64,000 nt of DNA, taken from NCBI GenBank assembly GCA_977030845.1, contig OZ365109.1, positions 60,574,001-60,638,000 of the forward strand, in the 5' to 3' direction. The notes beneath the pieces were generated by a model, which was not told the origin of the DNA, made no database searches, and saw nothing but the letters and a program-made list of their open reading frames with translations. A program made the position numbers and the translations under genes. Positions 9,300 to 46,892 of the stretch are shown in pieces (position 1 is the first letter of the stretch; each line of letters starts with the position of its first letter). The DNA is from Fimbriosthenelais zetlandica. Its lineage: Eukaryota.

Positions 9300-12200
9300 A
9301 GCATTTATTCTGACAGCAATGGTAAGAGCCTCTTTTACAACTAACCAGCTGCATGGTCCCTACATAGGCCTACAAAGTGGAGAGTAATTTTCTTTTATTG
9401 GAGACGGGAAATCCCCTTGGTTTTTCACAATCTTATTACGTTGCAATTTAGAGTTCTGGTGCGCCAGGAGAATAGGAAAATGTTCATATTTATACCATAC
9501 ACGACTGATGGGATGAACATACCTTCAGTTTTTGGTATAAATGAGCTTACTGCACCATTATCTCGAGAGGATATTCTTTTCAACACTTTTTATGTATGTG
9601 AAGGTGATGAGAAGGCCTGTCCATACGCTACTTTAATGATTCCCAAAAGCAATATTTAATTTCAATAGCAGTTAGATCATAAGTGCACTTAGATACTTTA
9701 TTAGTCTCCCCTTCCCCCTTTTCTCTTCAGGAAAGGCAAGAGCTGCCATGGAAACGTAGATCTTGAGAAATGCGTCAATCAATGTCCCCACTAGTGCTAA
9801 GTGCCCTCTCTGGAGAAAAGGTTTCCTTGGAGACAATTCCCTATCCAATTCAGCTGCCAAGTTAGCAATGGATTCGATGCATTCCATACATAGGGCTCCA
9901 CGTACAAATGTATATAATACGAATATATAAGAATTGTTTGGATTGTCCTTGGCAAGTGACACAGAATTAAAATGTCAAATTGGTCCTGCGAGGAATAAAT
10001 CTGAATTGAGACTATAACCAATTGTGCCAGTTGATATATGCTATAGATAGACGAGTTACTGCTAACCTAATTGCCAAGGTCCACCATAGTTCATACAAGT
10101 ATATAATAATAATACTCTCCAGTATAGTTATCAATCACAATTTAAACTATTTATAATATACATAATTGCCTTTAATACACTCTGAATATTATATGAGGTT
10201 TGGTGAAAACCTGCTACCAATTACACGCATATATATATAGTATACATGTAAACATAGAACTTTTTTCCAACAGAGCTAAAAAAAAATAATAGAAGATTAA
10301 GCAGCTATGAGAGAAGAAGGCAGCAAAAAGATAAATGGTACTGGTCTCACTGTCATTCGTAAATACCTTGGTGTATTTGTCGACATACTAAGCTGTCAAA
10401 TGCTGTATTTGATATAGCAGGCATTTTTTATGACGCAAGCGGTCTGACGGTCAGGAAAACCATGAAAGATTACAGGTAACATGACTATAGGCTACTCCCG
10501 TACATATGAGGGCAGTACATGGCAGACAAGGTAGAAAAACAGCATGGAAGCTTATTCCACCTTGAGCAAAGAAGAAAAATATCCTCATAAAGTATTAAAA
10601 ACACGAATGACGCCTCTAAGTACAATAGACGCTCAAATCACACAGAGACTAAGAATAGTTAAACCTAATAATTACAGATTCCTCCGCAGGATAAAGCCCT
10701 ATATTAGGATAAAGACCTTAAAACCATAAACTCTTTTGTCACTCATACACTTCAGTAGACGACGTACATGCTAATATCCATGGTTCAACAAAGTCCTATG
10801 TCTAACATTCAGGATAGGATGAAAAATAGACAATTATATATGTAATTGTATGTCAATGGATTCTAGGCTGAGATAGTAAGCATAATCCTGACAATACAGT
10901 GAGTCTAAGCCACGACCTATACACTGACCGTGTGGGGCTTCTGAAGTGAACAGGTTTAGCAAAATTGAAATGGAGTAGACTCAAGTGATTATACCGTCAA
11001 TAGAAAACTTGATCGAGCATATTCACGTCTATAGGTAAAGGTCATGATCAAGATTTTGAATTACCACCACCTGTGAACTAATAACACCAACGCCCATTAT
11101 TCTGGAAGGAAGGGAAGGAACTGCCTTATCTTCATGTATTATATGGGATCCCTTGTTTTAGAGGTTTCAATGGGTGAGTTTAGTGTTAACGTTTAATACT
11201 AAACACCAAGATTTATCACCAAATTTAAACTCATGAAATGTACACAGGACATACTGAATGAGCTATTTATTGGTTAATCTCACCTTCCTTTTTTCATTCA
11301 ATTCTTTTATTCTAACGGGCAATAAAGAGAAAAAATGTTCTACTATTGTTTGTTTATATGAATACATACTCAATGCTTATGATGTTGATCATCATAGAAG
11401 TTCCCTCCCAAGTCTAAAGTAGCCAGTCAGTCTTTTTAGGCATTTCTAATCCAGCTTCCTTTTTCTCTATCCATTTTTTCACTCCCTCCCTATACACACA
11501 CTTCCCCCTCTGTCTGGCTGTCTGCCTGTATTGATGGGATTTATATTACCTTGCTTTCAAGGGATGATTGGGTTATGACAATGGAAAAAGAGAGGATATA
11601 AACTTTCTGGAGTGTAAGGGGAATTACAATTTTTTTATTTCGATGAATTATTAGCTGGCAACGCCCACTTTACCTAAATCTGCTCGAGAAGAAAATCCTG
11701 ATTTTAGCGGAAATGAAATGGAGAAAGCAATTAAGATGAGCTGATAATTATTTTCAATGACATCAGAAAGACTTAGCTAGTCAAATTATGTTATTGAAGA
11801 TACTTCTGGAACTGGAGTTTATAAAACCTGACAGAATCCAACTCCCACCTGGTGTCAGTTTTTTAAAAAGAGTAAAAGATTACAGCTTTTCACGCTGTTC
11901 TTCCATTCGATAATGTATCTTCAGTACATTTAATATAGCAAGATTTTTCAAATCTGATGGTTTTTGTCACTTTGTAAAATGTCTACATCTCCTCCTGAAT
12001 CAAGATAGATAAGCCAAAGTAAAAAGCTTCGAGGAAAGCTGTAGGTAGTACAGTGTTCTACTCGAATTTGGGAGGTCCCCAGTTCAATTCCCCAAGCATT
12101 CTCCAAATTTGCCATTGCCCCTCTCCACCCAGGGCTTATCAAAGGCCACTGGTACATATATCACAAAGGACCACTCTTGTCTGTCAGTGTCATTGTGTAA

Positions 12201-15200
12201 TTGACAGGTATCTATTTATATAAATATTAATTAGCTGAGAAAATGGCAGGGGGGCATCATACCACACGGGGGCGTCATCGACATCTCTACTCTATCACCC
12301 ATATAAATTTTCTATAAGCATTGATAGCATATATACCTCATGGAGACAGGAAATACATAGGACCTATTTCACTAGGCATGGTCCTTGCATACTAGTTAGT
12401 TTTATGCATTCTGATTGTTCAGCGGACATTCCCCCTGTAGTATAACATCAGCGAGAGGAGGCTGCGAATTTTCGCAGAAAAATCTCTCGCAGCACAAGTC
12501 CTGCGAAAAGTCCAGCGAGCCCTCGCTGACTCCCGCTTGCATAACATCCCTCGCATCGCTGGAGTTAACGAGACGTCCCTCAGCGAGTAGACGCTGCGAG
12601 CGGTGGGCTGCGAAAATTCGCAGCCTGCTCTCGCTGCAGCGAGAGGAGAAAATTCGCAGCCTGCTCTCGCTGCAGCGAGAGGAGAAAATTCACAGCCTCC
12701 TCTCGCTGTTTCCATAGCTACAGCGAATTTTCGCGCTGGGACCAGTAACCTCTCCCTTGGTTCCCGCCCTATATAAAAAACGGTAGGACAGTTCCCTTTG
12801 TTACGTGGTTACTGATTTACTCACCGAATCTTGGGTAGCCTAATCTCAGTTCCCCTCTACCTAATCTATCCTTCCTCCTATCTACCACGCCTGACGCAAC
12901 ACTCTTTGGTTAATCAGATAATTAAGTTATCTTGTAGGCCTAGGCTGGTTTACATAGGGACAAGCTGAGAAGAGGGGTGTGGCCTAAGCTTCAATTTTAA
13001 ATAGCCTAATCCATACATAACCGTTAGTCTATGGTTATACAATGGCCAGATTGAAATCCCGTTTTTAATAAAGAATGACAGGTCTTATAAATATTCCTTC
13101 CTCTTACGGCGTTGTGCCAGTTTTGGGCTGAATAGAAAATCATACACCTTTTTTAATTACCCGTTTCAACGCTGCGAATTTCGCTGTTGCTATGGACAAT
13201 TTCGCTGTTGCTATGGACAAAAATCCCTGCTTTTGCAGTGTTTTCTCGCAGAGATTTTCGCAGGGTTTTCTCGCAGAAATTTTCGCAGGGTTTTCTCGCA
13301 GAGATTTTCGCAGGGTTTTCTCGCAGAGATTTTCGCAGGCTCCTCTCGCTGGTGATATGCCAGCTGATGTTCTCTCGCTGATGTTCAACTCGCAGAACTC
13401 CTCGCTGGAGTTCTCTTGCAGCATTTTTCGCAGGAAGCGTTTTCGCTCGCTGGCAGGCCAGCGAGGGCTCGCTGAAGTTTTCGCAGGATTTTTCCTGCGA
13501 ATTTTTTTTCTGCGAAAATTCGCAGCCTCCTCTCGCTGATGTTATACAAGAGGGGGATTGTCATGATACGGCAATCTGATTGCAGTCTGACATCCCAATC
13601 AACAATCCTTGAACAAAGTTGTGACATTCTTATATTCAATTATTTTCTTTATATTATTTATTTCTATTCCTTTTTCCATAAGGTATTAAAATATGAAACT
13701 GATTTCAAAATCATTTGGGAAAAGGAAAGAGCGGGCTCAGCCCTCATGTTCTCCTCTTTCATTCATTCAGGCGACTAGTTCTATTTATTTATTTATTGGA
13801 AATAGATTCTTATCAGGTTAAACCACTTCGGTATGAATCTCTCATATAATTATATTTGATTTCATCCCTAATTTTAAGTAACCAGTAGGCCTACTTGATG
13901 GGAGTAAAATAGGACTAATAGTGGCTTATTGGCCCACCAAACTAACTGATATTCATAATTAGTAAGAAAGTGACCTTCACCTGACCTTAACCTTGCTTTA
14001 GGGGGTACAACCAACGCTCCAGGCAGTAGGAAATTCCTCTCTGAATGTGTTGTCCCTAGCGCTCTTCCACTGCCCGCTGCTCCGCCTGGAAGTGAAATGT
14101 CCCCTTTGTCCTCTGGGGCCAGGTTCTCCACCATGTGCCTCATCATTTCTCTCCTATGTATAGATTTAAGAGACTTCCGGGCTCCAATATTATCAATGAC
14201 CTTCATGCTGTATTTTTTCAGTAGGTCTGTTGCCACGCGGTCGCGGCCAGCAATACGGTCCTCCACAGTGTTTTGTCGTGAATTCTCAGCTTTCTGAATG
14301 CTCGAGTCCAGGACACGGAGTCTCTCCTTGAACCGTTCTAGAACCGGGGTCAAGCCGGCCAAGGACTTCTTTATCACCCCGTCCCCTGATGGGACGTGAT
14401 GCCTTCTTTTACCAACATTACCATGCCTCTTATCATACCCCATGTCTAACAGCTCCTCTACTGTTCCAAGTCTGGCAGGGGCTGACATATGGATACCTCA
14501 ACTGGTAATGCTTCGCTATTTCTCAATTCCTTTTGTTGGAAAGTTTTTTTAAGGATTCCTTGAAGAGTTCTCATCTGCTCACTCTAAGTCATGTGTATCG
14601 TTATGCAATCCATCATAACACTAGAGGCTTATCATCTTTATACTTTGTTGAGGAGTTTGAGACAGACCCAGAAGATGTATCTGTTTACAATGGCAACCAG
14701 TATAAAGATACCATGAGGCTGGCAGCAAGGAGAAGAGTATATATCTAATGGAAGAAGACCCAGGCTGTCTTTGCATGTTTGGTTTACACTGTGAGAGCCA
14801 CTGATTCATACCCCTCCACTCATTAGGTGGAAATCATTAATTAATTAAAGCAGGGAACCTCAGAGAGAGGGTGCTTCTTCCTTTGCAGGTCACGGACATC
14901 GGTACAAACAAAACCCTGCACTGAGTTTGCAGTCTTTGCTGATTAATAATACAGCGGTAAAATCACCAGTAAAACTTTATCCAGCATGAGCCCAGTTCCA
15001 ATCATCCCAGGCCACAAAATTGACGAAGGAAATAATAAAAAAGAAAACTCCCACCTATCTAAGTACATCAAAACACTTTTATAATAGCTTGTTAGTCTGC
15101 ATTGGCCTACTGATAAGGAGTTTTCATCAGTCTCCCCTACTTTCTCTTCGGAAGCGTTTAAGTGGAATTAAATGGCAGCTTGAGGGGTCTTTTAATCTCT

Positions 15201-23800: not shown

Positions 23801-26800
23801 TTTTCTTTGCCCACAAATGAGTTTCCAAGATGCTTCTTCCGGATAGATTAAGTTGTGACAGTATTATTTAAGGGTATTTTCTATATTTCTGCTGATATAT
23901 AAACAGGAGCATCCCGGCCTTATTCAGTAGGTAAATTGCCACATGTACTCACCACTGTCCTAATCCTATTGCGGCGGAGGTTGAGCTCTGTTAGGGCATC
24001 CATCCCACTTAGATTGTCTACATGTTGTATGTTGTTACCAGCAAGGTTCAACACCCGTAACTCAGAGAGGTGGGAAAGGTTCCCCACTTGGCTTATCTGT
24101 TAAGATGAAGAAAAACAGTCCAGGTTTTGACCTATCTTATCTTTACACAATACATTAAGATAGCACTCAAGCTATCTGCAGATGCTAAGCTTTAGGGTTC
24201 CAGTGATTCTTAAGATATCCCAAATGGAACACAAGTGCAACATGTGTACACAAGTTTCCCTCATGAATGCAAAATTAAATTTTGGTCCTAGGCATTTCAT
24301 TTGATAGTACTCTTTTTCAATCATGGTAAAACTTAATACAAAGATTTTCGTACATTCAATGATAAATTTTGTTACAAGATTTTCAAGGATTTTTTAATTC
24401 TAATTGTCTATCCAATAATAAATCAATAATGGACTAAAGGTGGTTGTTTTACACCTAAAGTAGAAAGGTAATATATTAGAAGAGAGGTCTAAAACCTGTC
24501 AGGGGTATTTTGTTCATGTTACAAGGACTTTTAATGTAGCAAGAAGTCTTCATGCTGCCACCTAGTGTTAACTCCCTCCGCTAACTTTACACGAGTTGAT
24601 TCATTGAACTAGATTTCTATTCAATTTCCAAAGAATTTGAAAACTGTACTTCCTATAGGTGCCGTTCCCAGTATACAGTATCATAGGTAATATTCACGAG
24701 ATGATAAATCCAGAAGCAAATATAACAAAACCTCAATTAACTACAAATCCATTAACTTACCATGTTTCCATGAAGATCTAACACGTCCAATTTGGTTAAA
24801 GGCTCCAAGTTTTCAATCCTCTGAATTCTGAAAAACGATACTTTAACATTCAAAAAGCAGTTAAATGAGCAGCATAAAAGCCATATTTGTTGTCCTTTAA
24901 ATTGGCAATTCGATATTTAATTTCTAGCCGATGAAATCTCTCTTGGATTTTTACATCCATTAAATGTTTTAAGCTGGTGGCAATAAACCAAAAACCAAAT
25001 TTATGATATTAAATTTCAAAGCAGACCATTACAAACCGAGGCAATTTTCATGGAGAAAAAGTGTCAGAATGAAATTTAAATGACAAGCTATGACACAGTC
25101 ACCTTGAATACAATCCCCGTTTGGGCTAATATCAACAAAGATACACTGGTAAAATTATAATACGTTGATTTAAACATTTATTTTTTAAACATGGTTCCGA
25201 CAGATGTTTGGGTGCAAGAATTAATAAATGAACGAATGGTCTATCGGTGGATAAATGGATGAATAATGCAATGAATGTATGGATAATCAAATCACCTGTT
25301 TTTGCCGAGCATGAGAACCCGGAGAGACTTGAGAGCGTTTAGACCTGATATAGATTCTATCTGGTTATCATAGAGGTCTAGGAAGATAAGTCGCTTCAGG
25401 CCATGGAGGTGTTCAATGCGGGTGATCAAGTTGTGCTGGTAGTTAAGCAAACGGAGCTGCTCTTCTCCTTCCAGCGCTGGGCACACTGCCAACCTTCGTC
25501 TAGAGGAAAGATTCTTTTTGAGTGATATAAAACCATTGTTCTTGGTACTATAGTGGAAAATGACAGTCTAATCTACCAGATATTTTTCTATCCAGATGGG
25601 ATAACTGGCGTTTAGCATTAGCATTAGCCTGACAAAAAACAATTAAAAATGAAAGCATTTACCTTCATACTATAAGCTAACAAAACTGGCTACTTCTAAG
25701 TTGGCACAGGTAAGGGGTATTTTGTTCAATTTTTTTCCAAACCTGCTAAAAAAAGATGCTAGAAAAAAGCTCAGATCATTACCCAGTATACTTTCCCTTT
25801 CCATGAATACCCATTTATAAAGTCAATTTCTCAGACATGTCGTACATTGAACCTAGTATCAAAGCCGAATATCTTTAGCAACATAAAAATGTACATAAAC
25901 TTCATAAGTAAATGACAATATTATGATGACATTCTATGGCGACTGGACGAATATTTCCTCTGCAAGTGACTTTTTTGTTCCATTACTATCACAGGCCTAC
26001 GCTACAAATATTCGGAGGTCATTGCTTTCAGTTATACCAAGTTTTGATGCTGGCGTCTGGTGTTTTGTGATGGCGTCCTCCAGGACAATTTTTACAAAAT
26101 TGTCCACAAGAATCCATTGACTATATCAGACAAGTTTTCTAGTAGAAGTAGAATGATGTCCAGCGAAATGAGATTATTTATTAGCCTATGCAGTAATTAT
26201 TTTGGATGAAATTCTATATTTTGTTGCTAATTGCTGGAAGGAAGGACTTGCCATTACCTGTCAAGGTTTAGTCGGTCGGGATTGGCGGCTCGCTCCTCGG
26301 GTGTCCGGTAGACGACAGGTATGCCAGGTGAAGCCGGATTTTCAGCAAAAATGACGCGATCACCTTTAGGGAATACATTGACAATATTCAGAGATAAGCA
26401 ATTAAATTTCAACGTATAACTGAAAAGAAAATGTGAAAAGTAAAATTACTTTGTCTAGAAATCAATTAAAGGATGTTAAATCGAATTAATCCAATAACAC
26501 TAAATCATTTTCTGGAAAGGACGATTCTTTTCTTTTGAAAGTATCTCAACAATTATCCATGGATGAAATTGTTCAATATCATTAAGACTTTAACCAATTT
26601 CACTTTGTTCGAATCTTATTTAGATTTAATCAAATACAATCAATGTTACTCTCCAACTTATTGATTACACCCAACAGGGGAGAGCGACGTTATAAAAGGA
26701 TTGATTAGAAACATTGATTGTTTAAGAGGGAAAAGGCTAAGGCTCTAGGATTCATCAGTACAGGCACCTAGTGAGAATACCTGGCAAATAGACCGGAGCC

Positions 26801-38221: not shown

Positions 38222-41200
38222 CTGCAATAATGAAATTTATTAGAATTATATTTAAAATAGAACAGAAAGTAGTCATAACATAATAGATTATTACTGTAAT
38301 TATTACTGTAACACCATAGACATGATTTATAGTTATGGTTAATAATAAAGCCTTAATTATTATTTCGCCACTCACTTTTAATAACACTGCTAGTAGTGAA
38401 ATAGGCTATATATATTATCCATTCATATAAGTTATTAATATTCTTAATGAATATACATGTATTCACTAAAATTCGAAAATGCCAGTGGCCTAATTAATAT
38501 TTTTAATGAATATATACATGTATTCACTAAAATTCGAAAATGCCAGTGGCCTATATAAATATCACATCTCGGAACTTCAGAAGTGCATTTTAGCATTTCT
38601 TATACATGTAGTGTCAGAAGGGTTAGTACAAAACGTCGTATGTTATACATTGTAATTTTTCTTTTAAAAAATCCTTAAAATTAAACACGTCTAGGCCTAT
38701 ATTTCAGAATGATAATGCACCACAGACGGGAAGGACATGTTTTTCGCCATAACCTGTCAGATCGAGGATAGAACAAACATAAAAATCCGGTTGTCAGCCT
38801 TTCCCCTTTGCACATGATCTAAAGCAATTTCTTAGGTTTACACAAAATGGTGCACGTTCGAGGCGCCAGCTTGTTTTATGAGAGGTGAATAGTTTTAAAA
38901 TCTGATCAAGAAGACATCTTGTTTTTGGGCCAGGCCACCATATAGAGGCACAGCAGGTGTGCCGGGGAACAGTTGACATTGAAAGGTGGCCATGTTCAAG
39001 TCACGCAATCTGTATCCCTACACCCAGTGAAACACCATGTCTTGTTGACCAAAATAATTGTTAAGTCAGGCTTTCAACATCTGCTGCAAGAAGATCCAAT
39101 TCATCATTTGGAAAATTGGAATTTTGAATAGATTTACCATCACACGTGTTATTCATTTCTAAGCTACGAACCCACTACAAAATTATGCAGTGTTAACAAA
39201 ATAATCAGTGACCTATAAGGAACATAAGAATTGTCTTCACTCTGATTGAGAAAAAAACATGTAGGCCTTATTTAATAAATAATTCCACAGAAGTGATACA
39301 AAGTACCGTGATATTTCCTAGAATACCGTTCAAACAAAATATGACTCTGGACATTGTTAGTGTTAGGTCAGGTCCATACTCAGTCAAGAAAAGGCTATTC
39401 ACTTCACCGTGGAAATAAATGTTAATTTTCTTTGAATATGCCAATTTTTCTAAGTAGCCTACCAGTAGGCCTACCCTATAGTAATGTCCATGGGTGAAAT
39501 GGATCCCATTTCCATTAAGCTAAAGCCATTCCTCAAAAGATTAGAAAGTACAAGAGAGAGTTAGTATAAATATGGGCAGTGGTCTTGGGTAGGAGTTCTG
39601 CTGAGATTTCCCATGCATCATGTTTCTTTTTAGTGTGTTAAGGATATGAACGTAGACATCCCATGTAAAGGCATGCTTCCCTTAGTTTTGTATTTGACAG
39701 TGTAAGTTAAATTTGATTAGTCCAAGTGAGATGTAATGATTACTGGTCTTAAGAGGGTTCATTCAATATATTAAGCATAATTGAATCATTATAAATAATT
39801 ATCCTACACTTACTTTTGAAGGCGAGTTCATAATTAGGACATAACTTTAGTAAAGCTATACTATATAATATATTAGTTAATCAGTAAAGACAGGCTGCAA
39901 TTTTTCCCCATCCTTCCACATAGAAGCTGATATTTGATATTTTGTCCTTGCTGTCAGGGAGAGGTTTGATCTATTGAGATCATTCTTACCTGTCCATTTT
40001 CTAATAATCGAGCATCGCTGTTTGTTGCTTGAGAAGTTCTTGGTTGCTTACGTATCCTACATACACACAAGAAATACACACAAATATTCATTTTTTGTCC
40101 ATTTCAAGAACGGGGGGTCATTTGATTTCCCCATGGTTTCAAATTGGCAGCTGAGCCTGTTGATGCTTTGGTAAAATTTTCAGCCATCACGGAAAAGGAC
40201 TGGGAATGATGGACAACTTTAGAGGGACACGTGAGTCTGTAGAAGGGCTGTACATAAGAAAAGCCCGAAGATGAACGTAATCAAAATCTGGTCTTTTGCC
40301 AAGCATTATTACAATAATGTCCAAAATAAAGTGTAAATTGCTCAGAAGCAAACACTAAATTTGTACCATTAGTCACAACGTCAAAAAATAAAATGAAATT
40401 TGTATTTTAATAATGATTTTTTAAAGAGATGGACCATTTCAAAGTTTCACAGATCTTCACGAGACCAGATTAAGACGTGCAAGTGCTTTGATTAGGGGGT
40501 TGAGGGACTGAGTGTTTATATATGGAACCCTGGGCTTGTGATTTCTAGGTTTGTGGGTTTCTTGCCTATCATAAACCATGGACCTGACCTAAAAGAATCA
40601 ATGTATCGCCTCTAGGTCAGTTTTCGTTATCCCACTAAAACACAGTACAAAAATAAACCACCTAAGCATCCTTTTGCTGGGGAAAACAAAAAAGGGGATA
40701 GGTTGATGTCTGACACCGAAAATACCCACCCCTCTCCGGACTGAACTAGGCCTGGAAAGGCTTTCCACAATTGAAGATCGGTTACAGAATGGTCTTCTAT
40801 AGAGTTCTTCTGCTGTAGCTTCAAACTCCCGATCTCGGAGCAAGTGTTGTTTTCTTTTATACCTTAAAGCGATATATATACCATACATTCATCATTGCTG
40901 TTTAGCGATAAAATATATTTTATCCCAGCTTTCTAAAAAAAATAAATAAAAAAAAAGTCTATCTAGAGGAATGAGGTAATCCATACACCAGAGGAGACAT
41001 GTTTTTAGGGTTGGTTTGGGATGAACTGTCAAGGTGGGTTTATATATATTATGTAGTTCATGAACGTATGACAGGGTGAGGTGTTGAGGATATAGGGTGG
41101 AAGGGCAAAATTACAACGTGCACAATCACAAGAAAAATGTCGGCGTGAAATGATTAATTCACTGGGCAAAACAAAGCAACCAATAATATTCAAGCAATAC

Positions 41201-44200
41201 AATTCAGGCTCAAACCAAATCATAAAACCATGAGAATACATCAATATATATAAGAACATACACAAATTGTACTTTAAAAATTCATATTGTATATAGAGGT
41301 ATATTATAATAATGTAATGCAGCATATCTTTCTTGATAATTTTTACGAGTACTTATCAGATGAAATTTTCTCTTAAGGTCATGTTAAGATGTCTTATCCA
41401 ATACGTTCTGTTATGGTATAGGCTTAAAAATAATATGTAATTAGTTGTTAAAGGTAAGAAATTAGATTAATATTATATTATTATGTATTTGACGGTTTTG
41501 AAATGTACATAGTGTTGAGGCAATAGAATGTCAACTTACCTGAACCATACATATATTCCCAGGATTATTGCAAAGGAGATAAGGATAGCAACTGTAATAC
41601 CGCCTGCAAGCTGTGCTGTCCGTATTGGATTGTTTAAAACTGGGACTGTATCAAGGAAGAAAGAAAAATATATTAGGATGAACAAATAGGCCACGAGTCG
41701 GTTCAAAATACGTCAATGATTTCATTGCTTACTATTTTAATTCGAAAAATACTATAATAATACATTGTTTATGGACTATATTAATGGATATATAAATTTA
41801 TATTAAACAAAGATGGTAATACAATTATTTAAGATTCAAACTTAATTGTAATTATTTGTATAACTATAAGACAGGATTTATTAGGGATCACTAATGCCAG
41901 TGGAGCGGATATGTATTCAATGAGGATATAATAAAGGGAGTATTCCATGAAGAATAGCCACATAGTGCGTGGAGATGGGAAAAGTCCCGGTGTGGGATAA
42001 TAAGGAAAAAGGATGAGGGTGATATAAAAGGAACCAGGAATGGGGGAAGGGTTGCCCATTATTAGACTGGGAATAATTAATATCCTTTAAAGGTAATTAC
42101 ACCTTTAAAGCAAGCTTCTTTTTAAAAAAAAAACAAAAAACAACCTTATCTTAGATCATTAAGTACAAACATAGAAAGTATTTTAAACTTTCACTGTCGC
42201 AGAAAAAAAAAGTTATGTTCCTCTTACAAGTTAGACTTCAAACTTAATGGCCTAATATTGCTAAGGTGACGGAAAGTATGTACCTCTTAATTTGTATCTA
42301 ATACTACTGTTAACAATAAATTGAAAGTGCAACCAAGAAATATAATATTTTAAATACATATAAATATCAAACATACAAATTTACAATAAAGTGGACAAGT
42401 TCTAATAAGAAATATTTGAACAAGAATAATGCAAATAACTTCATCTTTCAGCTCACCAACTTAGAAATCTCTCAGTGGCTAACTTGAACTCTGGTTGTCT
42501 GTACCCAATAAAAGGGCATAATACATGTCGGCTTTCTTCTAAGATATTAAGGCATGAATGGTCTTTCACCACACATAAGTAGAAACACTCTGGCATAAAA
42601 TCCAGGCACGGACGTGGCAAGCCAACCGAACACTTCAGTTCAATTCAAACAAAACAGCACAAGCATGAACATCTTAAGAACGTTTTAAGGTTTCTAAATC
42701 AACGTCAGTAGAGAACATAGAACATATGTGTGCTCCCGCTATGACCGTATCCGGCATCAAACAATGTTTATATTTCGTTGTTCTCGGTTTTTATGTTTTT
42801 CCATTTCCTACTTACGTCAAAAGGGGCAAGGCAAAGGACATCCTTGAATGCCTACCGCATCCTGGCACTATATGTGATGTTAACACAGAATAAAATATAA
42901 GGCCAGGCATCTTGTTGCCAAATCAACTTTTATATCAGCCTTTAAGGAAGTAAATTCGTATACCTAATACAAATGGAAGGTTGGGAGGGAAATATTTAAA
43001 CACGAGAACACCATCATCATGACGTCTAGATGCCTTTTTGTGAATTGTGTTGATATCATCTTTGATATGATCTCAAAACGTAAGAAACCACGCCTAGAAT
43101 TTTAAAAATCGGAATGTTCTTAGTCTACTTAGCCTTCCTCCATTTTCACTTTCCCAAATGCGGGTCTATTCTGATAATCATAATAACGGAATAATGGAAA
43201 ATATTTCAATCTTTTACAACATTACATAATGTCTTCGTATTAACCACGACCAGTGACAATAAAAATAATTAGGGATGTTGAATCTCTTGTCGATAAGTGC
43301 TACGTTGGGATCCGTACTTTCACCATTAAGGAACCAACAAGGATGAAGGAACACGTTAAGTATTTCTACTTATTTTCTGGTTGTTTAACCGGTAGTTATT
43401 CGGTCATCACTTCATTCAGCCTAAGTTATTATAATAACATCCCATCAATGGTTAGCTTCTTCCAATCTCATCCCATTCTCAAATTTCGCAGGCGTCCGTT
43501 TGCGCCTGCCCAGGAAGCATCTGCTACAGGATCCATTAGACAAGACATGTGCCTTACTGCCACCGGCCACGAGCTAGCGCTAATTGCGTTAATTAAGGTT
43601 AATTAATGAAAAAGAATGGATAAGGCACACAGCAGGGGAAAATCGGGCCGATCGTGTGGGTCTCGAGCTGTAATATATGCTCAAGCACATGCGGCAACAG
43701 CCATAAATCCATGTCTCCGAATTACGAGACACCAGGAGTCTATAGACTACTAAAAAATTAGGATGACATTTTTAAAGAAAGACAAATACAATCCATTTCC
43801 CTCAAAATCCTCTCTTCTGGTAAATTTTAACTCGAGAGAATACACAAATATAGCAGTAAAAATAAATGTTATAATCAATGCCTTGGAACACATTAATTTA
43901 ACAGTTCCCTCCAATTGAGTAGCCTATGAACTATAATATTGTCACAAAAATATTCGTTCTCAAGTCGTGCCATCACAAAGGAAACTAAATAGCTTGCACT
44001 TATTTCTTATGGGACAACATGATTTCGTCTATCAGATGATCCCAATGCTTTCTGGTCAGAGGTGGATGGGAACAATCACAGTTATGACAAGCATTTCGTT
44101 TTGGATCCTGGTGTTTTACCTCCCGGAGTGACAGACAAGGCTAGGAGACGACACAATACCCCTCGGGCTATGAACATGGGCGGAACAAGAGCATGGAACT

Positions 44201-46892
44201 CCGATTACTCGATCTCTGGGAAAAGGGGAGCAAGTACTTATCCACATCACCGCCCCTACTATTAGATAGCTTTTATATGTTATTGTGGCACCAACATGGG
44301 GGCTAGAGTCGGTCAATGTTCACTCAGCAGAGGGTCAACAACCACATGTTGAATCAATCGACACAGCTGTATGTAATATAATGTATATGCTGCTGTAGCT
44401 AAATATGAAGTAATGCCAACATTATTTACAAGACAGCTCCCATATTAGAAAGCTGCTGAGGGGTGCAATTTATTCTTTGCCTGCCACGTGTTTCTTATAG
44501 CCCAAAATGGTACACATTTAATTAATTATCCCATAATTGAATTATGAATGCAGTCTTCCCCATTGTGAGTTTCCAGACATAAATTCCAAATTTCTTATCC
44601 TTGAGACTATTGTTATATCCCAGAACCAAAACAAATAGTCTTAGCTTAAAACCATTGGAATGACCTTCAGCAAAAGGCAGTTGTTCCTTGTTGTGGGCAT
44701 AGCCCTCCTAAAAATTATCTATCTTTTTTTTCTATTTACCGACAGAAATCCAAGCAAAAGAATCATGGCAACACTCAACACACCACAACAAGGATCATGC
44801 ACTCGAGCGAAGTATTTCCGTAAAGTGAAAACATCCTTTTTAATGGTATCACATGAAGGAAATAAGATCAAATACAACCAAAACAGCATCATCCATGATT
44901 GAAGGTGGGAATCAACAGAAAGACTAAGGGGTTCAATTCTAGGCATAATTTATACTACGGAATAAATCAAAAAGTCAGCAAATGAAAATAGTTGACAAAA
45001 CATTTAAAATGTGCTGAAAACAACATTGACCATCATTGCTTAATTCCTATAAAATGTGCTGCATCCAATATCTTATGTATAGGAACTTTTGCAATGGAAT
45101 AACTATCACAACAGTGGGTGGAAGGGAAAACCCCAGTGAAAGCATTAATTACCCAACTAGTTCATACTATGGAGACTAAAAATGACGTACATCTATGGAT
45201 GATGGGAAAAGCCAAGCAGTCATCAACATGCAATACTAGAGCATAGCGACTTACATATCCCAGGATCTATAAACTTGAACTCGCAACGCCTGCCCGTCCA
45301 ATCGACAGGACAGCTGAAAGTTCGCACAAAATGCAAAAAAGAGAGATATCTTAACTTTCTAGCATTCGACCTCTGGAAAAAGAAACTCTGGAATAAGCCA
45401 AAAAGCTGGCAATTTGTCTTCTTAGATCGCAGATGACATGCTTCCAAAGGCGTCTGCTCTTCTCTCCTGCTTTCTCTCTTCCTCTCTCTTGTTACAGTGA
45501 TGCTGCATAGCAATGCTTTTTTTTAATCTAACAGCTGGAAGGATTAAGGATTCCTCTATAAAAGGTGTTTCCCCCATAAGTCAGTTCTTAGGATGTCTAC
45601 ACCAAAGAGAGTGGGTCACCAGGGGACTGGAGTCCATCCATCAAGATCCATTCTGCAGACGACATTGGCATCTGTAGTTCTGCAGGTGACTGGATCCAAT
45701 CTGTTGGGGATGAGATTGGACCCAATCTGCTTGAGACACGACCCAGTCCCCTTGGTATAGACCCAGTATTTAATGGACACTAACAGAGTTAGGAGGGGTT
45801 CACATGCCATCAGCTACATTGTCATAAGGGCAGTGGCTGCGATGCATTGTTGTTAAAGATCTTTCGAGGGAAAAAATTATCTTACAAACTTCCGGTAAAT
45901 CTTTCCTGTGACAGCGCGTTCCAGTTGTACCGGTGACGCACCTAAAATGCAAGAGTGGAGCATCTATCTCATCTCCAATCTAGTATTTTTACACTTTTTT
46001 CTTCAGCACTGTTGTGTTAGTTCTTGGATATGTACAGGAGGCTATGGCGGTGGAAAGAAAGGAAGCATTTCCTGATGGTTTCCCAGTCTTTTTTGTTAGT
46101 GGAAGAGGTGGGTTAGGACAGGTAGGCCTCATTATTAGAGACATAAAAAACCTGCCGAGAGGATTGGACAGGGGTTCCTGAAGAAAGGGGGTAGAGAATA
46201 CTCCGCTCACTGTCAATGGATTGTTTTCATAGACTCATAATTCGCAAGGTAGACTTACATGGTGGTATATAACGAAATTCACACCGTTCCCCGGTGTAGC
46301 GATCTGTGCAGCTGTTATGATAGAGATACTTGTTTATAAGAGTCAAGCAGCATTTGTCTCAACAATAGGCATCAGTGGAAGTATGTCAAATGGATAAAAT
46401 AAACATAAACCGTAATAATTGAGGCAACTAGGATCAAACAAATTGTACATTGTAAAACCTTGCAATACAATAAAAAATTATTTAGTCATTTTTTAAAGGA
46501 ATTAATGCAATATCAATAACTGCTACTCCCGTTGTTAAAAACATGGCAAAATTTTGCATTAGAATGATCTTTATCTTAGATTTACTTCTAAAATATTGTT
46601 ATTTGTTATTTGTTATTGGGATATGATTACTGTTTTCTCCTAAAGAAATTCATATTTTTTTCAATGAAGAAAGGAATGATTAATTTCAAAGGTTTCTACC
46701 TGCAACCAATAATTCGGACTCCTTCCCCGACGCCTATGGAAGCAAAACATTCCCCATTATTTAGGCAGGACTTATTTGCCTTTTCTTGTAGTGTACATTC
46801 TAGTCTTTGACTTGCTGGCGTTGTGGAGAAATCTGGTAACATTGTAGGTGATGCTGTGGTAACTCTCTCAGCTGCTCGTCGATAACACCCTT
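38024..46892 (-). CDS. Single-EGF, single-pass transmembrane pro-ligand of the EGFR-ligand type (Spitz/Keren/TGF-alpha-like); 5'-partial; join of exons 46892-46700, 45313-45255, 41645-41540, 40056-39990, 38221-38024
   Basis: All exons have AG/GT boundaries and continuous phase. Translation: (E)GCYRRAAERVTTASPTMLPDFSTTPASQRLECTLQEKANKSCLNNGECFASIGVGEGVRIIGCSCPVDWTGRRCEFKFIDPGIFPVLNNPIRTAQLAGGITVAILISFAIILGIYVWFRIRKQPRTSQATNSDARLLENGQNSTDKTRSQPGDQHPRDDDVHNG...TTNSS*. Six-Cys EGF module C-x9-C-x5-C-x14-C-x-C-x8-C with GxRCE; intron between Cys4 and Cys5, as in EGFR-ligand genes; TM helix followed by the basic stop-transfer RIRK. Confidence 0.88.
38434..38553. repeat. Tandem duplication of a ~60-bp unit
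   Basis: ATTAATATT(C/T)TTAATGAATATA(TA)CATGTATTCACTAAAATTCGAAAATGCCAGTGGCCTA occurs twice head-to-tail. Confidence 0.9.
39990..40056 (-). CDS. EGF-ligand exon: cytoplasmic RIRKQPRTSQATNSDARLLENGQ
   Basis: tgtatgtag| ... CAG|gtaag; 67 nt, phase 2-0; bridges the TM exon to the long frame of the last exon. Confidence 0.82.
40598..40888 (-). mobile_element. Decayed L1-clade RT fragment in an EGF-ligand intron
   Basis: LYRRPFCNRSSIVESLSRPSSVRRGV...PFFVF (like LYxxxxSxVxxNGxxSxPFxVxRGVRQGCPLSPxLF). Confidence 0.45.
41540..41645 (-). CDS. EGF-ligand exon: juxtamembrane and transmembrane segment
   Basis: tacag| ... CAG|gtaagt; 106 nt, phase 1-2; hydrophobic ITVAILISFAIILGIYVWF. Confidence 0.88.
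45255..45313 (-). CDS. EGF-ligand exon: EGF Cys5-6 (CPVDWTGRRCEFKFIDPGI)
   Basis: actttcag| ... |gtaagt; 59 nt, phase 2-1. Confidence 0.9.
46700..46892 (-). CDS. EGF-ligand exon: N-terminal Cys, Ser/Thr-rich stalk, EGF Cys1-4
   Basis: ctttacag| ... AG|gtagaa; 193 nt, phase 1-2, 63 open codons. Confidence 0.85.

What the first reader, a model, noticed from the sequence alone, without database searches (positions are those of the whole stretch)
41540..41645. Spitz-type rhomboid cleavage motif in a probable deuterostome EGFR ligand
Seen: the segment entering the TM helix reads NNPIRTAQLAGGITVAIL (core codons 41625..41599). Established: Drosophila Spitz is shed by intramembrane rhomboid proteases at ...MLEKA|SIASGAM.... 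The rhomboid recognition motif is large hydrophobic P4, small P1 and hydrophobic P2', followed by helix-destabilising residues. Vertebrate EGFR ligands are shed mainly by ADAM10/17. Here I-R-T-A|Q-L-A-G-G gives P4=Ile, P1=Ala, P2'=Leu and then AGG, in the same register as Spitz. The post-EGF segment RCEFKFID also echoes Spitz RCEYKEID (Spitz sequence recalled from memory). Inference: if the host is an echinoderm, rhomboid-dependent EGFR-ligand release may be retained in a deuterostome and be ancestral to bilaterians, not a protostome specialisation.
Basis: partly seen in the sequence, partly recalled or inferred. Interest (0 to 1): 0.75.

Follow-up and report, generated by a model that had tools for sequence, protein, structure and literature searches.

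The report
Annelid Spitz-type EGF ligand exon
The exon is real and carries a cut-site pattern shared with the fly growth-factor Spitz, but the animal is an annelid worm, not an echinoderm, so it says nothing about deuterostomes and is an ordinary, if neatly conserved, protostome gene.

Summary
Observation confirmed. Window 41645-41540 (minus strand) is a clean 106-nt exon. It encodes (F)PVLNNPIRTAQLAGGITVAILISFAIILGIYVWF, and codons 41625-41599 read IRTAQLAGG. With three neighbouring exons it builds a single-EGF, single-pass membrane protein. Its EGF domain hits Spitz and neuregulin-1 best in the PDB.

BLASTP places I-R-T-A|Q-L-A-G-G on Spitz L-E-K-A|S-I-A-S-G, with the P1 Ala on Spitz A138.

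The pattern is inherited, not chance. Capitella teleta EGF-1 has MRTA|SIAAG and a cytoplasmic tail 80% identical to this gene's. A second genomic orthologue (L019) has LRKA|HIAAG with the same splice phases. Published nemertean, brachiopod, priapulid and beetle ligands carry the same pattern.

The genome's mitochondrial DNA has the annelid gene order, all genes on one strand, and tRNA-Lys(UUU). The gene is therefore the annelid orthologue of Spitz/Keren-type ligands.

The amphioxus, Ciona, Saccoglossus and human EGF-type ligands printed in Barberán et al. 2016 lack the signature.

Rhomboid cleavage is plausible, because catalytically intact rhomboid exons exist in the genome, but it is untested. 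On its own the loose P4/P1/P2' motif is weak evidence (35-51% of random TM starts).

The scan listed this same stretch once more (s1-184616), and not on other DNA.

The parts
46700..46892 (-). Exon encoding (E)GCYRR, a Ser/Thr/Pro-rich linker and EGF cysteines C1-C4 (CTLQEKANKSCLNNGECFASIGVGEGVRIIGC). The acceptor is cag|AA and the donor is AG|gtagaa.
   Evidence: An orthologous exon with the same splice phases is P0003/L010. The exon is single-copy in the genome.
45255..45313 (-). 59-nt exon encoding EGF C5-C6 and the post-EGF segment: (S)CPVDWTGRRCEFKFIDPGI.
   Evidence: The spliced EGF domain hits Spitz (E 5.7e-5) and NRG1 (6.2e-5) best in the PDB.
41540..41645 (-). The finding: a 106-nt exon encoding the juxtamembrane stalk, the candidate cleavage site and the TM helix.
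   Evidence: The 561-nt spliced model stays in frame. The orthologous exon L019:1781-1889 has the same phases.
41599..41625 (-). Codons for I-R-T-A|Q-L-A-G-G: P4 Ile, P1 Ala, P2' Leu, then A-G-G.
   Evidence: It aligns to Spitz LEKA|SIASG and to Capitella MRTA|SIAAG. The motif rules are in PMC2941825.
41542..41610 (-). Predicted 23-residue TM helix, LAGGITVAILISFAIILGIYVWF.
   Evidence: Read from the sequence. It is followed by RYKRKQ.
40725..40862 (-). Exon encoding the stop-transfer signal and the conserved cytoplasmic tail: (R)YKRKQHLLRDREFEATAEELYRRPFCNRSSIVESLSRPSSVRRG. The acceptor is ctttaag|G. The 3' end and donor are uncertain (about 40735-40725).
   Evidence: The tail is 80% identical to the Capitella EGF-1 tail and 73-83% identical to P0004/L019.

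Best explanation
The exon belongs to the annelid orthologue of the Spitz/Keren-type (TGF-alpha-like) membrane-tethered EGFR ligand. It corresponds to the gene catalogued as EGF-1 in Capitella teleta and Owenia fusiformis. The precursor has a signal peptide (candidate exon about 5.5 kb beyond the window), then Cys-Tyr-Arg-Arg, a linker and one EGF domain. A 20-residue stalk, one TM helix and a conserved tail follow. The stalk/TM junction h-x-x-A|x-[IL]-A-[AG]-G is homologous to the Spitz site A138|S139. The most likely mechanism is that a secretase-type rhomboid cuts after the Ala at the top of the helix and releases the EGF domain. Shown here: the gene structure, the orthology, the annelid host, conservation of the motif, and the presence of rhomboid genes. 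Inferred: that cleavage happens, and that a rhomboid does it.
For: The EGF domain is closest to Spitz and NRG1. The tail is 80% identical to Capitella EGF-1. The JM/TM region aligns without gaps to Capitella, with R-T-A-x-[IL]-A-x-G shared. It aligns in register to the mapped Spitz site. A second genomic orthologue has LRKA|HIAAG. Published sequences show the same pattern in Lineus (MRTA|NIAAG), Terebratalia (VATA|HLAGG), Priapulus (VEVA|GLAGG) and Tribolium (LETA|SAGG). IRTA|QL is the only acceptable motif instance near the helix start (my reading against the rules). The genome has rhomboid exons with HxxxN, WR/FR, GASGG and the TM6 His intact.
Against: There is no RNA evidence: no sequencing run was listed. 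There is no cleavage assay. The loose motif is common, and only 5 of 13 top-scoring candidates were cleaved in Strisovsky 2009. In Owenia EGF-1 the same register puts Lys at P4 (KMTA|NIAAG; this is OCR text). Conserved small residues at the top of a helix could instead serve packing or another protease. Pfam EGF scores are below cut-off.
Confidence: 0.55

Rival explanations
1. Same gene and same host, but the ligand is shed by an ADAM-type metalloprotease in the 20-residue stalk, or it signals while tethered. The conserved A-x-[IL]-A-G-G would then reflect helix packing or trafficking, not rhomboid recognition.
For: The motif rules are loose: 38% of single-pass proteins carry the motif, and only 5 of 13 top-scoring candidates were cut. 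My simulation gives 35-51%. Owenia has Lys at P4 in this register. ADAM shedding is the rule in mammals (PMC13597478 abstract).
Against: The residues conserved from beetle to annelid are exactly the positions needed for Spitz cleavage. The deuterostome ligands that use ADAMs lack them.
Confidence: 0.3
2. One reading: a deuterostome (echinoderm) EGFR ligand that retains Spitz-type rhomboid release.
For: Only the motif itself.
Against: The mitochondrial gene order and strand usage are annelid. tRNA-Lys has anticodon TTT. The nuclear orthologues are Capitella and Owenia EGF-1. Other agents independently judged this genome to be annelid.
Confidence: 0.02
3. The gene is not a signalling ligand: it is a non-ligand EGF membrane protein, or the exons are not expressed as modelled.
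For: There are no transcripts. The EGF Pfam score is below cut-off.
Against: The best PDB matches are all EGFR/ErbB ligands. The exons, their phases and the tail are conserved in at least three other annelid sequences. Barberán 2016 classes the orthologues as EGF-type ligands.
Confidence: 0.08

Closest known systems
Drosophila Spitz / Keren (TGF-alpha-like EGFR ligands cleaved by Rhomboid-1)
   Same: Both have a single EGF domain (CLN..CFA...RCE[YF]K.ID) and a stalk of 20-21 residues. The site pattern is h-x-x-A|x-[IL]-A-[SG]-G at the helix start, and a Cys follows the predicted signal peptide directly.
   Different: The EGF C3-C4 loop is two residues longer. The N-terminus reads CYRR rather than CSSR. 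The cytoplasmic tail is unrelated to that of Spitz. Cleavage has not been tested.
Capitella teleta EGF-1 (JGI 212613) and Owenia fusiformis EGF-1 (Barberán et al. 2016, PMC4914847)
   Same: These are orthologues. The tail is 80% identical to Capitella's. The JM/TM region aligns without gaps. Owenia shows signal peptide-DG|CFRR, as here.
   Different: They are from different species, and the linker and EGF loops have diverged. Those entries were catalogued without comment on the cleavage site.
Neuregulin-1 / Vein (NRG-type ligands)
   Same: The EGF domain scores as well against NRG1 as against Spitz.
   Different: No Ig-domain exon was seen, and the full-length orthologue Owenia EGF-1 has none. 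The stalk/TM signature is the Spitz type.
Mammalian EGF cleaved by RHBDL2 (Adrain et al. 2011, cited in PMC13597478)
   Same: It is an EGFR ligand that a rhomboid can release.
   Different: It is a deuterostome ligand with a different architecture. The human ligands printed lack the A-x-[IL]-A-G-G start.

Membership tests
Spitz/Keren-type membrane-tethered EGFR ligands | One EGF domain with six Cys in ErbB-ligand spacing, most similar to known ligands | tested here: met
   The spacing is C-x9-C-x5-C-x14-C-x-C-x8-C. The top PDB hits are Spitz, at E 5.7e-5, and NRG1, at 6.2e-5. Pfam EGF is below cut-off.
Spitz/Keren-type membrane-tethered EGFR ligands | Type I single-pass precursor with a short stalk and a stop-transfer signal | tested here: met
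   There is a 23-residue hydrophobic helix followed by RYKRKQ. The spliced model is in frame.
Spitz/Keren-type membrane-tethered EGFR ligands | Signal peptide followed directly by an N-terminal Cys (the palmitoylation site in Spitz) | tested here: inconclusive
   A candidate exon lies outside the window at L016:5440-5503 and encodes MIPQVFTWLSAALVAAFLGMA, giving ..MAEG|CYRR. Owenia has ..IADG|CFRR. There is no RNA support.
Spitz/Keren-type membrane-tethered EGFR ligands | No Ig domain (distinguishes it from Vein/NRG) | tested here: inconclusive
   No Ig exon was noticed, and full-length Owenia EGF-1 lacks one. The 22-kb first intron was not searched exhaustively.
Spitz/Keren-type membrane-tethered EGFR ligands | Binds and activates EGFR | not testable with these tools
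   This needs a receptor assay.
Rhomboid substrates of the Spitz type | Recognition motif: large hydrophobic P4, small P1, hydrophobic P2', without Pro/Asp/Trp nearby | tested here: met
   The site is I-R-T-A|Q-L, judged against the rules in PMC2941825.
Rhomboid substrates of the Spitz type | Motif at the outer end of the TM helix, followed by helix-destabilising small residues | tested here: met
   P1 sits one residue before the helix start and A-G-G follows. The register matches the Spitz site.
Rhomboid substrates of the Spitz type | Conservation of the site in orthologues | tested here: met
   Capitella has MRTA|SIAAG. L019 has LRKA|HIAAG. Lineus, Terebratalia, Priapulus and Tribolium also carry it. 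Owenia is a partial exception, with Lys at P4.
Rhomboid substrates of the Spitz type | A catalytically intact secretase rhomboid in the same genome | tested here: met
   PF01694 hits nine places. L009 and L003 keep HxxxN, WR/FR, GASGG and the TM6 His. Their subfamily was not assigned.
Rhomboid substrates of the Spitz type | Actual cleavage by a rhomboid | not testable with these tools
   This needs a co-expression or in vitro assay.
Deuterostome (echinoderm) origin of the host | Echinoderm-type mitochondrial genome (genes on both strands, tRNA-Lys CUU with AAA=Asn) | tested here: not met
   All genes lie on one strand in the annelid order, and tRNA-Lys has anticodon TTT. The echinoderm criteria are from my own knowledge.

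The most novel reading that the evidence does not exclude
Both hallmarks of Spitz processing are conserved in annelids, nemerteans, brachiopods, priapulids and insects. These are the Cys directly after the signal peptide and the h-x-x-A|x-[IL]-A-[AGS]-G rhomboid site. Both are absent from the amphioxus, tunicate, hemichordate and human EGF-type ligands read here. Rhomboid-dependent release would then be ancestral for all protostomes, not an ecdysozoan speciality. The reliance on ADAMs would be a deuterostome-side change.
Probability: 0.4. Interest if true: 0.5.

Novelty: new member of a known kind. Interest (0 to 1): 0.27.

Why it matters
As posed, a deuterostome ligand with a Spitz-type site, the finding would have moved the origin of rhomboid-dependent EGFR signalling back to the bilaterian ancestor. 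That reading falls because the host is an annelid. A smaller point remains. The Spitz cleavage-site pattern is kept in spiralian orthologues, and I found no paper that says so. This makes annelids a testable case for whether rhomboid release of EGF ligands predates the split between Ecdysozoa and Spiralia.

Tried and rejected
- **Sequencing runs:** none was listed for the 5.6-kb gene body or for the EGF exon, so splice junctions and expression are unverified and read laying was not used.
- **HMMER search with the first EGF exon:** against 1.8 billion representatives it gave only three hits, one of them an orthologous exon.
- **Word-based search with the TM-exon ORF:** it found nothing.
- **Full-length spliced query:** a typed query for the search for homologous proteins was left out, because the string has no reference and is long.
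- **Signal-peptide exon:** none was found inside the window. A candidate was found 5.5 kb beyond it.
- **Pfam on the EGF domain:** below cut-off.
- **ARAGORN in its default mode:** it missed the mitochondrial tRNAs, and the -mt mode was needed.
- **Literature searches:** searches joining rhomboid, Spitz or EGFR with echinoderm, Capitella or annelid found nothing relevant.
- **Neuregulin/Vein reading:** considered and set aside, as there is no Ig domain and the stalk/TM signature is the Spitz type.

Full report
**1. The observation**

On the minus strand, 41645-41540 is a 106-nt exon. A polypyrimidine acceptor (tgatacag|TC) bounds it on one side and a consensus donor (AG|gtaagt) on the other. 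It reads (F)PVLNNPIRTAQLAGGITVAILISFAIILGIYVWF.

RCEFKFID lies in the preceding 59-nt exon, 45313-45255. EGF cysteines C1-C4 lie in exon 46892-46700. A fourth exon starts at 40862 and supplies R-YKRKQHLLRDREFEATAEELYRRPFCNRSSIVESLSRPSSVRRG. The junction codons are AG|C (Ser), T|TC (Phe) and AG|G (Arg). The spliced model, with a candidate first exon added, is 561 nt, in frame and free of stops.

- CLNDAHCFA...RCEYKEID is in PDB 3ltf chain D.
- PRPMLEKASIASGAMCALVF... is quoted in PMC8657799.
- Spitz P1 = A138 and P4 = L135 are in PMC2941825.

**2. What the gene is**

The spliced EGF domain finds Spitz (E 5.7e-5) and neuregulin-1 (6.2e-5) as its best PDB matches. Other EGFR ligands, together with Notch and other EGF modules, follow. 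Pfam EGF models score below their cut-offs. The first EGF exon is single-copy in the genome.

The supplementary sequences of Barberán et al. 2016 (PMC4914847; OCR text, so single residues may be wrong) identify the orthologues.
- **Capitella teleta EGF-1** has the tail LLADHEFEATADELYRRPFSKRSSIVESLSRPGSLRRG. It matches the window's tail at 35 of 44 residues, or 80%.
- **Owenia fusiformis EGF-1** has LTRDREFNASPEELGYRQPFNRSSIIES.
- Owenia's N-terminus is a signal peptide ending ...IADG, followed by CFRR. The window has (E)GCYRR at the start of its exon. An orthologous exon from a Logan contig (P0003/L010) has DGCYRR with the same splice phases.

A candidate signal-peptide exon lies 5.5 kb beyond the window, at L016:5440-5503. 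It encodes MIPQVFTWLSAALVAAFLGMA and ends G|gtaggt. No RNA supports it.

**3. The host**

The assembly is 447 Mb in 79 contigs. Contig C79 is a 15,667-bp mitochondrial genome. Under code 5, all protein and rRNA genes lie on one strand. ARAGORN -mt also places all but three tRNA calls on that strand, and those three look like spurious duplicates.

The gene order is cox1-N-cox2-D-atp8-Y-cox3-Q-nad6-cob-W-atp6-R-H-nad5-F-E-P-T-nad4L-nad4-C-G-M-rrnS-V-rrnL-L-A-L-[non-coding]-S-nad1-I-K-nad3-S-nad2. Pfam placement confirms COX1, ATP6, ND3 and cytochrome b.

PMC2639372 reports three arrangements as seeming to be restricted to annelids and their kin:
- atp6 lies between cob and nad5.
- nad5 and nad4L/nad4 are interchanged.
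- nad3 lies between nad1 and nad2.

PMC4505326 states that all annelid mitochondrial genes studied are on one strand. tRNA-Lys has anticodon TTT, whereas the echinoderm code (AAA = Asn) goes with CTT; that link is my own knowledge. The nuclear gene's closest relatives are annelid genes, so the mitochondrial contig is not a contaminant story. Other agents working on this genome reached the same phylum.

**4. Is the motif more than chance?**

Alone, it is not.
- Strisovsky et al. found a motif in range in 64 of 169 single-pass proteins of one bacterium. Only 5 of 13 top-scoring candidates were cleaved.
- My simulation gives 35-51% for the loose rule.
- The fuller Spitz-like form occurs in about 0.2% of simulated helix starts. 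That form is Ala at P1, hydrophobic P4 and P2', then three A/G/S residues including a Gly.

The real argument is conservation.
- BLASTP aligns window NNPIRTAQLAGGITV to Capitella EDNMRTASIAAGVSV without a gap.
- It aligns window P-IRTAQLAGG to Spitz PMLEKASIASG, putting the P1 Ala on A138.
- A second genomic orthologue (P0004, locus L019, from a 420-kb ENA contig) has its tail exon at 9962-10117 of the locus (the gene call that holds it is 10001-10171). Its TM exon at 1781-1889 has the same phases and reads LPLKMQHLRKA|HIAAGVSVAVLIVFVILLSLYVYI.

Published sequences show the same pattern:

| Species / ligand | Site |
|---|---|
| Lineus EGF-2 | MRTA\|NIAAG |
| Terebratalia | VATA\|HLAGG |
| Novocrania | VMAA\|HIGAG |
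| Priapulus | VEVA\|GLAGG |
| Halicryptus | VEAA\|GIAGG |
| Tribolium Keren | LETA\|SAGG |
| Owenia EGF-1 | KMTA\|NIAAG |

In Owenia the P4 residue is Lys in this register. The distance from C6 to P1 is 17-23 residues throughout.

In the window protein, IRTA|QL is the only acceptable instance near the helix start. IDPG|IF has Asp and Pro in the motif and lies 14 residues outside the helix. ITVA|IL lies eight residues deep in the helix.

**5. Deuterostomes**

One search prints four amphioxus ligands, two Ciona ligands, the Saccoglossus ligand and seven human EGF-type ligands. None shows A-x-[IL]-A-[AG]-G at the helix start. None shows a Cys-x-R-R directly after the signal peptide. Saccoglossus LMDTA|LG has Gly at P2', which abolished cleavage in TatA. 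I read these by eye from OCR text.

**6. Mechanism**

The genome has Rhomboid-domain exons at nine places.
- L009 keeps HLVFN, WR, GASGG and the TM6 His.
- L003 keeps HLFFN, FR, GASGG and the TM6 His.
- L005 looks iRhom-like (GPSGSQF).

A rhomboid cut after the Ala at the top of the helix is therefore feasible, and it is the most economical reading of the conserved positions. It remains inference. An ADAM cut in the stalk is the main rival.

**7. Verdict**

The gene is a Spitz-type ligand. The deuterostome inference is refuted. What remains is a new member of a known kind, with a modest and testable evolutionary point about protostomes.

Noticed in passing
window 46878-46892 (-), and L016:5440-5503 (-), which lies outside the window: The exon starts (E)G-C-Y-R-R. 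The same G-C-[YF]-R-R follows the signal peptide in Owenia EGF-1 and opens the orthologous exon in P0003. Spitz, Keren, Tribolium, Priapulus, Terebratalia and Lineus ligands have Cys-S-[SR]-[RQT] at the same place. This fits the other first-reader note on N-terminal palmitoylation.
   Followed up: partly
G000:C79 (L012 and L013): Complete 15,667-bp mitochondrial genome with the annelid gene order. trnG sits between trnC and trnM rather than before cox3. A non-coding stretch of about 1.1 kb with a TA/TG-rich repeat lies between trnL(taa) and trnS(tga).
   Followed up: partly
window 25295-25567 (-): An open frame with two leucine-rich repeats (Pfam LRR_4, E 4e-14). It is probably an exon of a neighbouring LRR gene on the same strand.
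   Followed up: partly
window 12400-13560: A block where several frames on both strands stay open over a repeated unit (for example RKFAACSRCSE and FSQRFSQGFLAEIFAG). It looks like a minisatellite or tandem repeat. It was not examined.
   Followed up: no
L005 and L006 (G000:C13, 17.75 Mb and 24.12 Mb): Two rhomboid-like exons with an iRhom-type context (..SGSQF.., Cys-rich C-terminal part). One has GPSG and the other GASG, so one of the pair may keep a catalytic serine.
   Followed up: no
P0001 (ENA, 170 aa): A predicted protein with two tandem ligand-like EGF domains (CLGGGECFAM..., CMAEGKCFAM...) and no TM segment. It was hit by the EGF exon at E 7e-6. Its organism is unknown.
   Followed up: no
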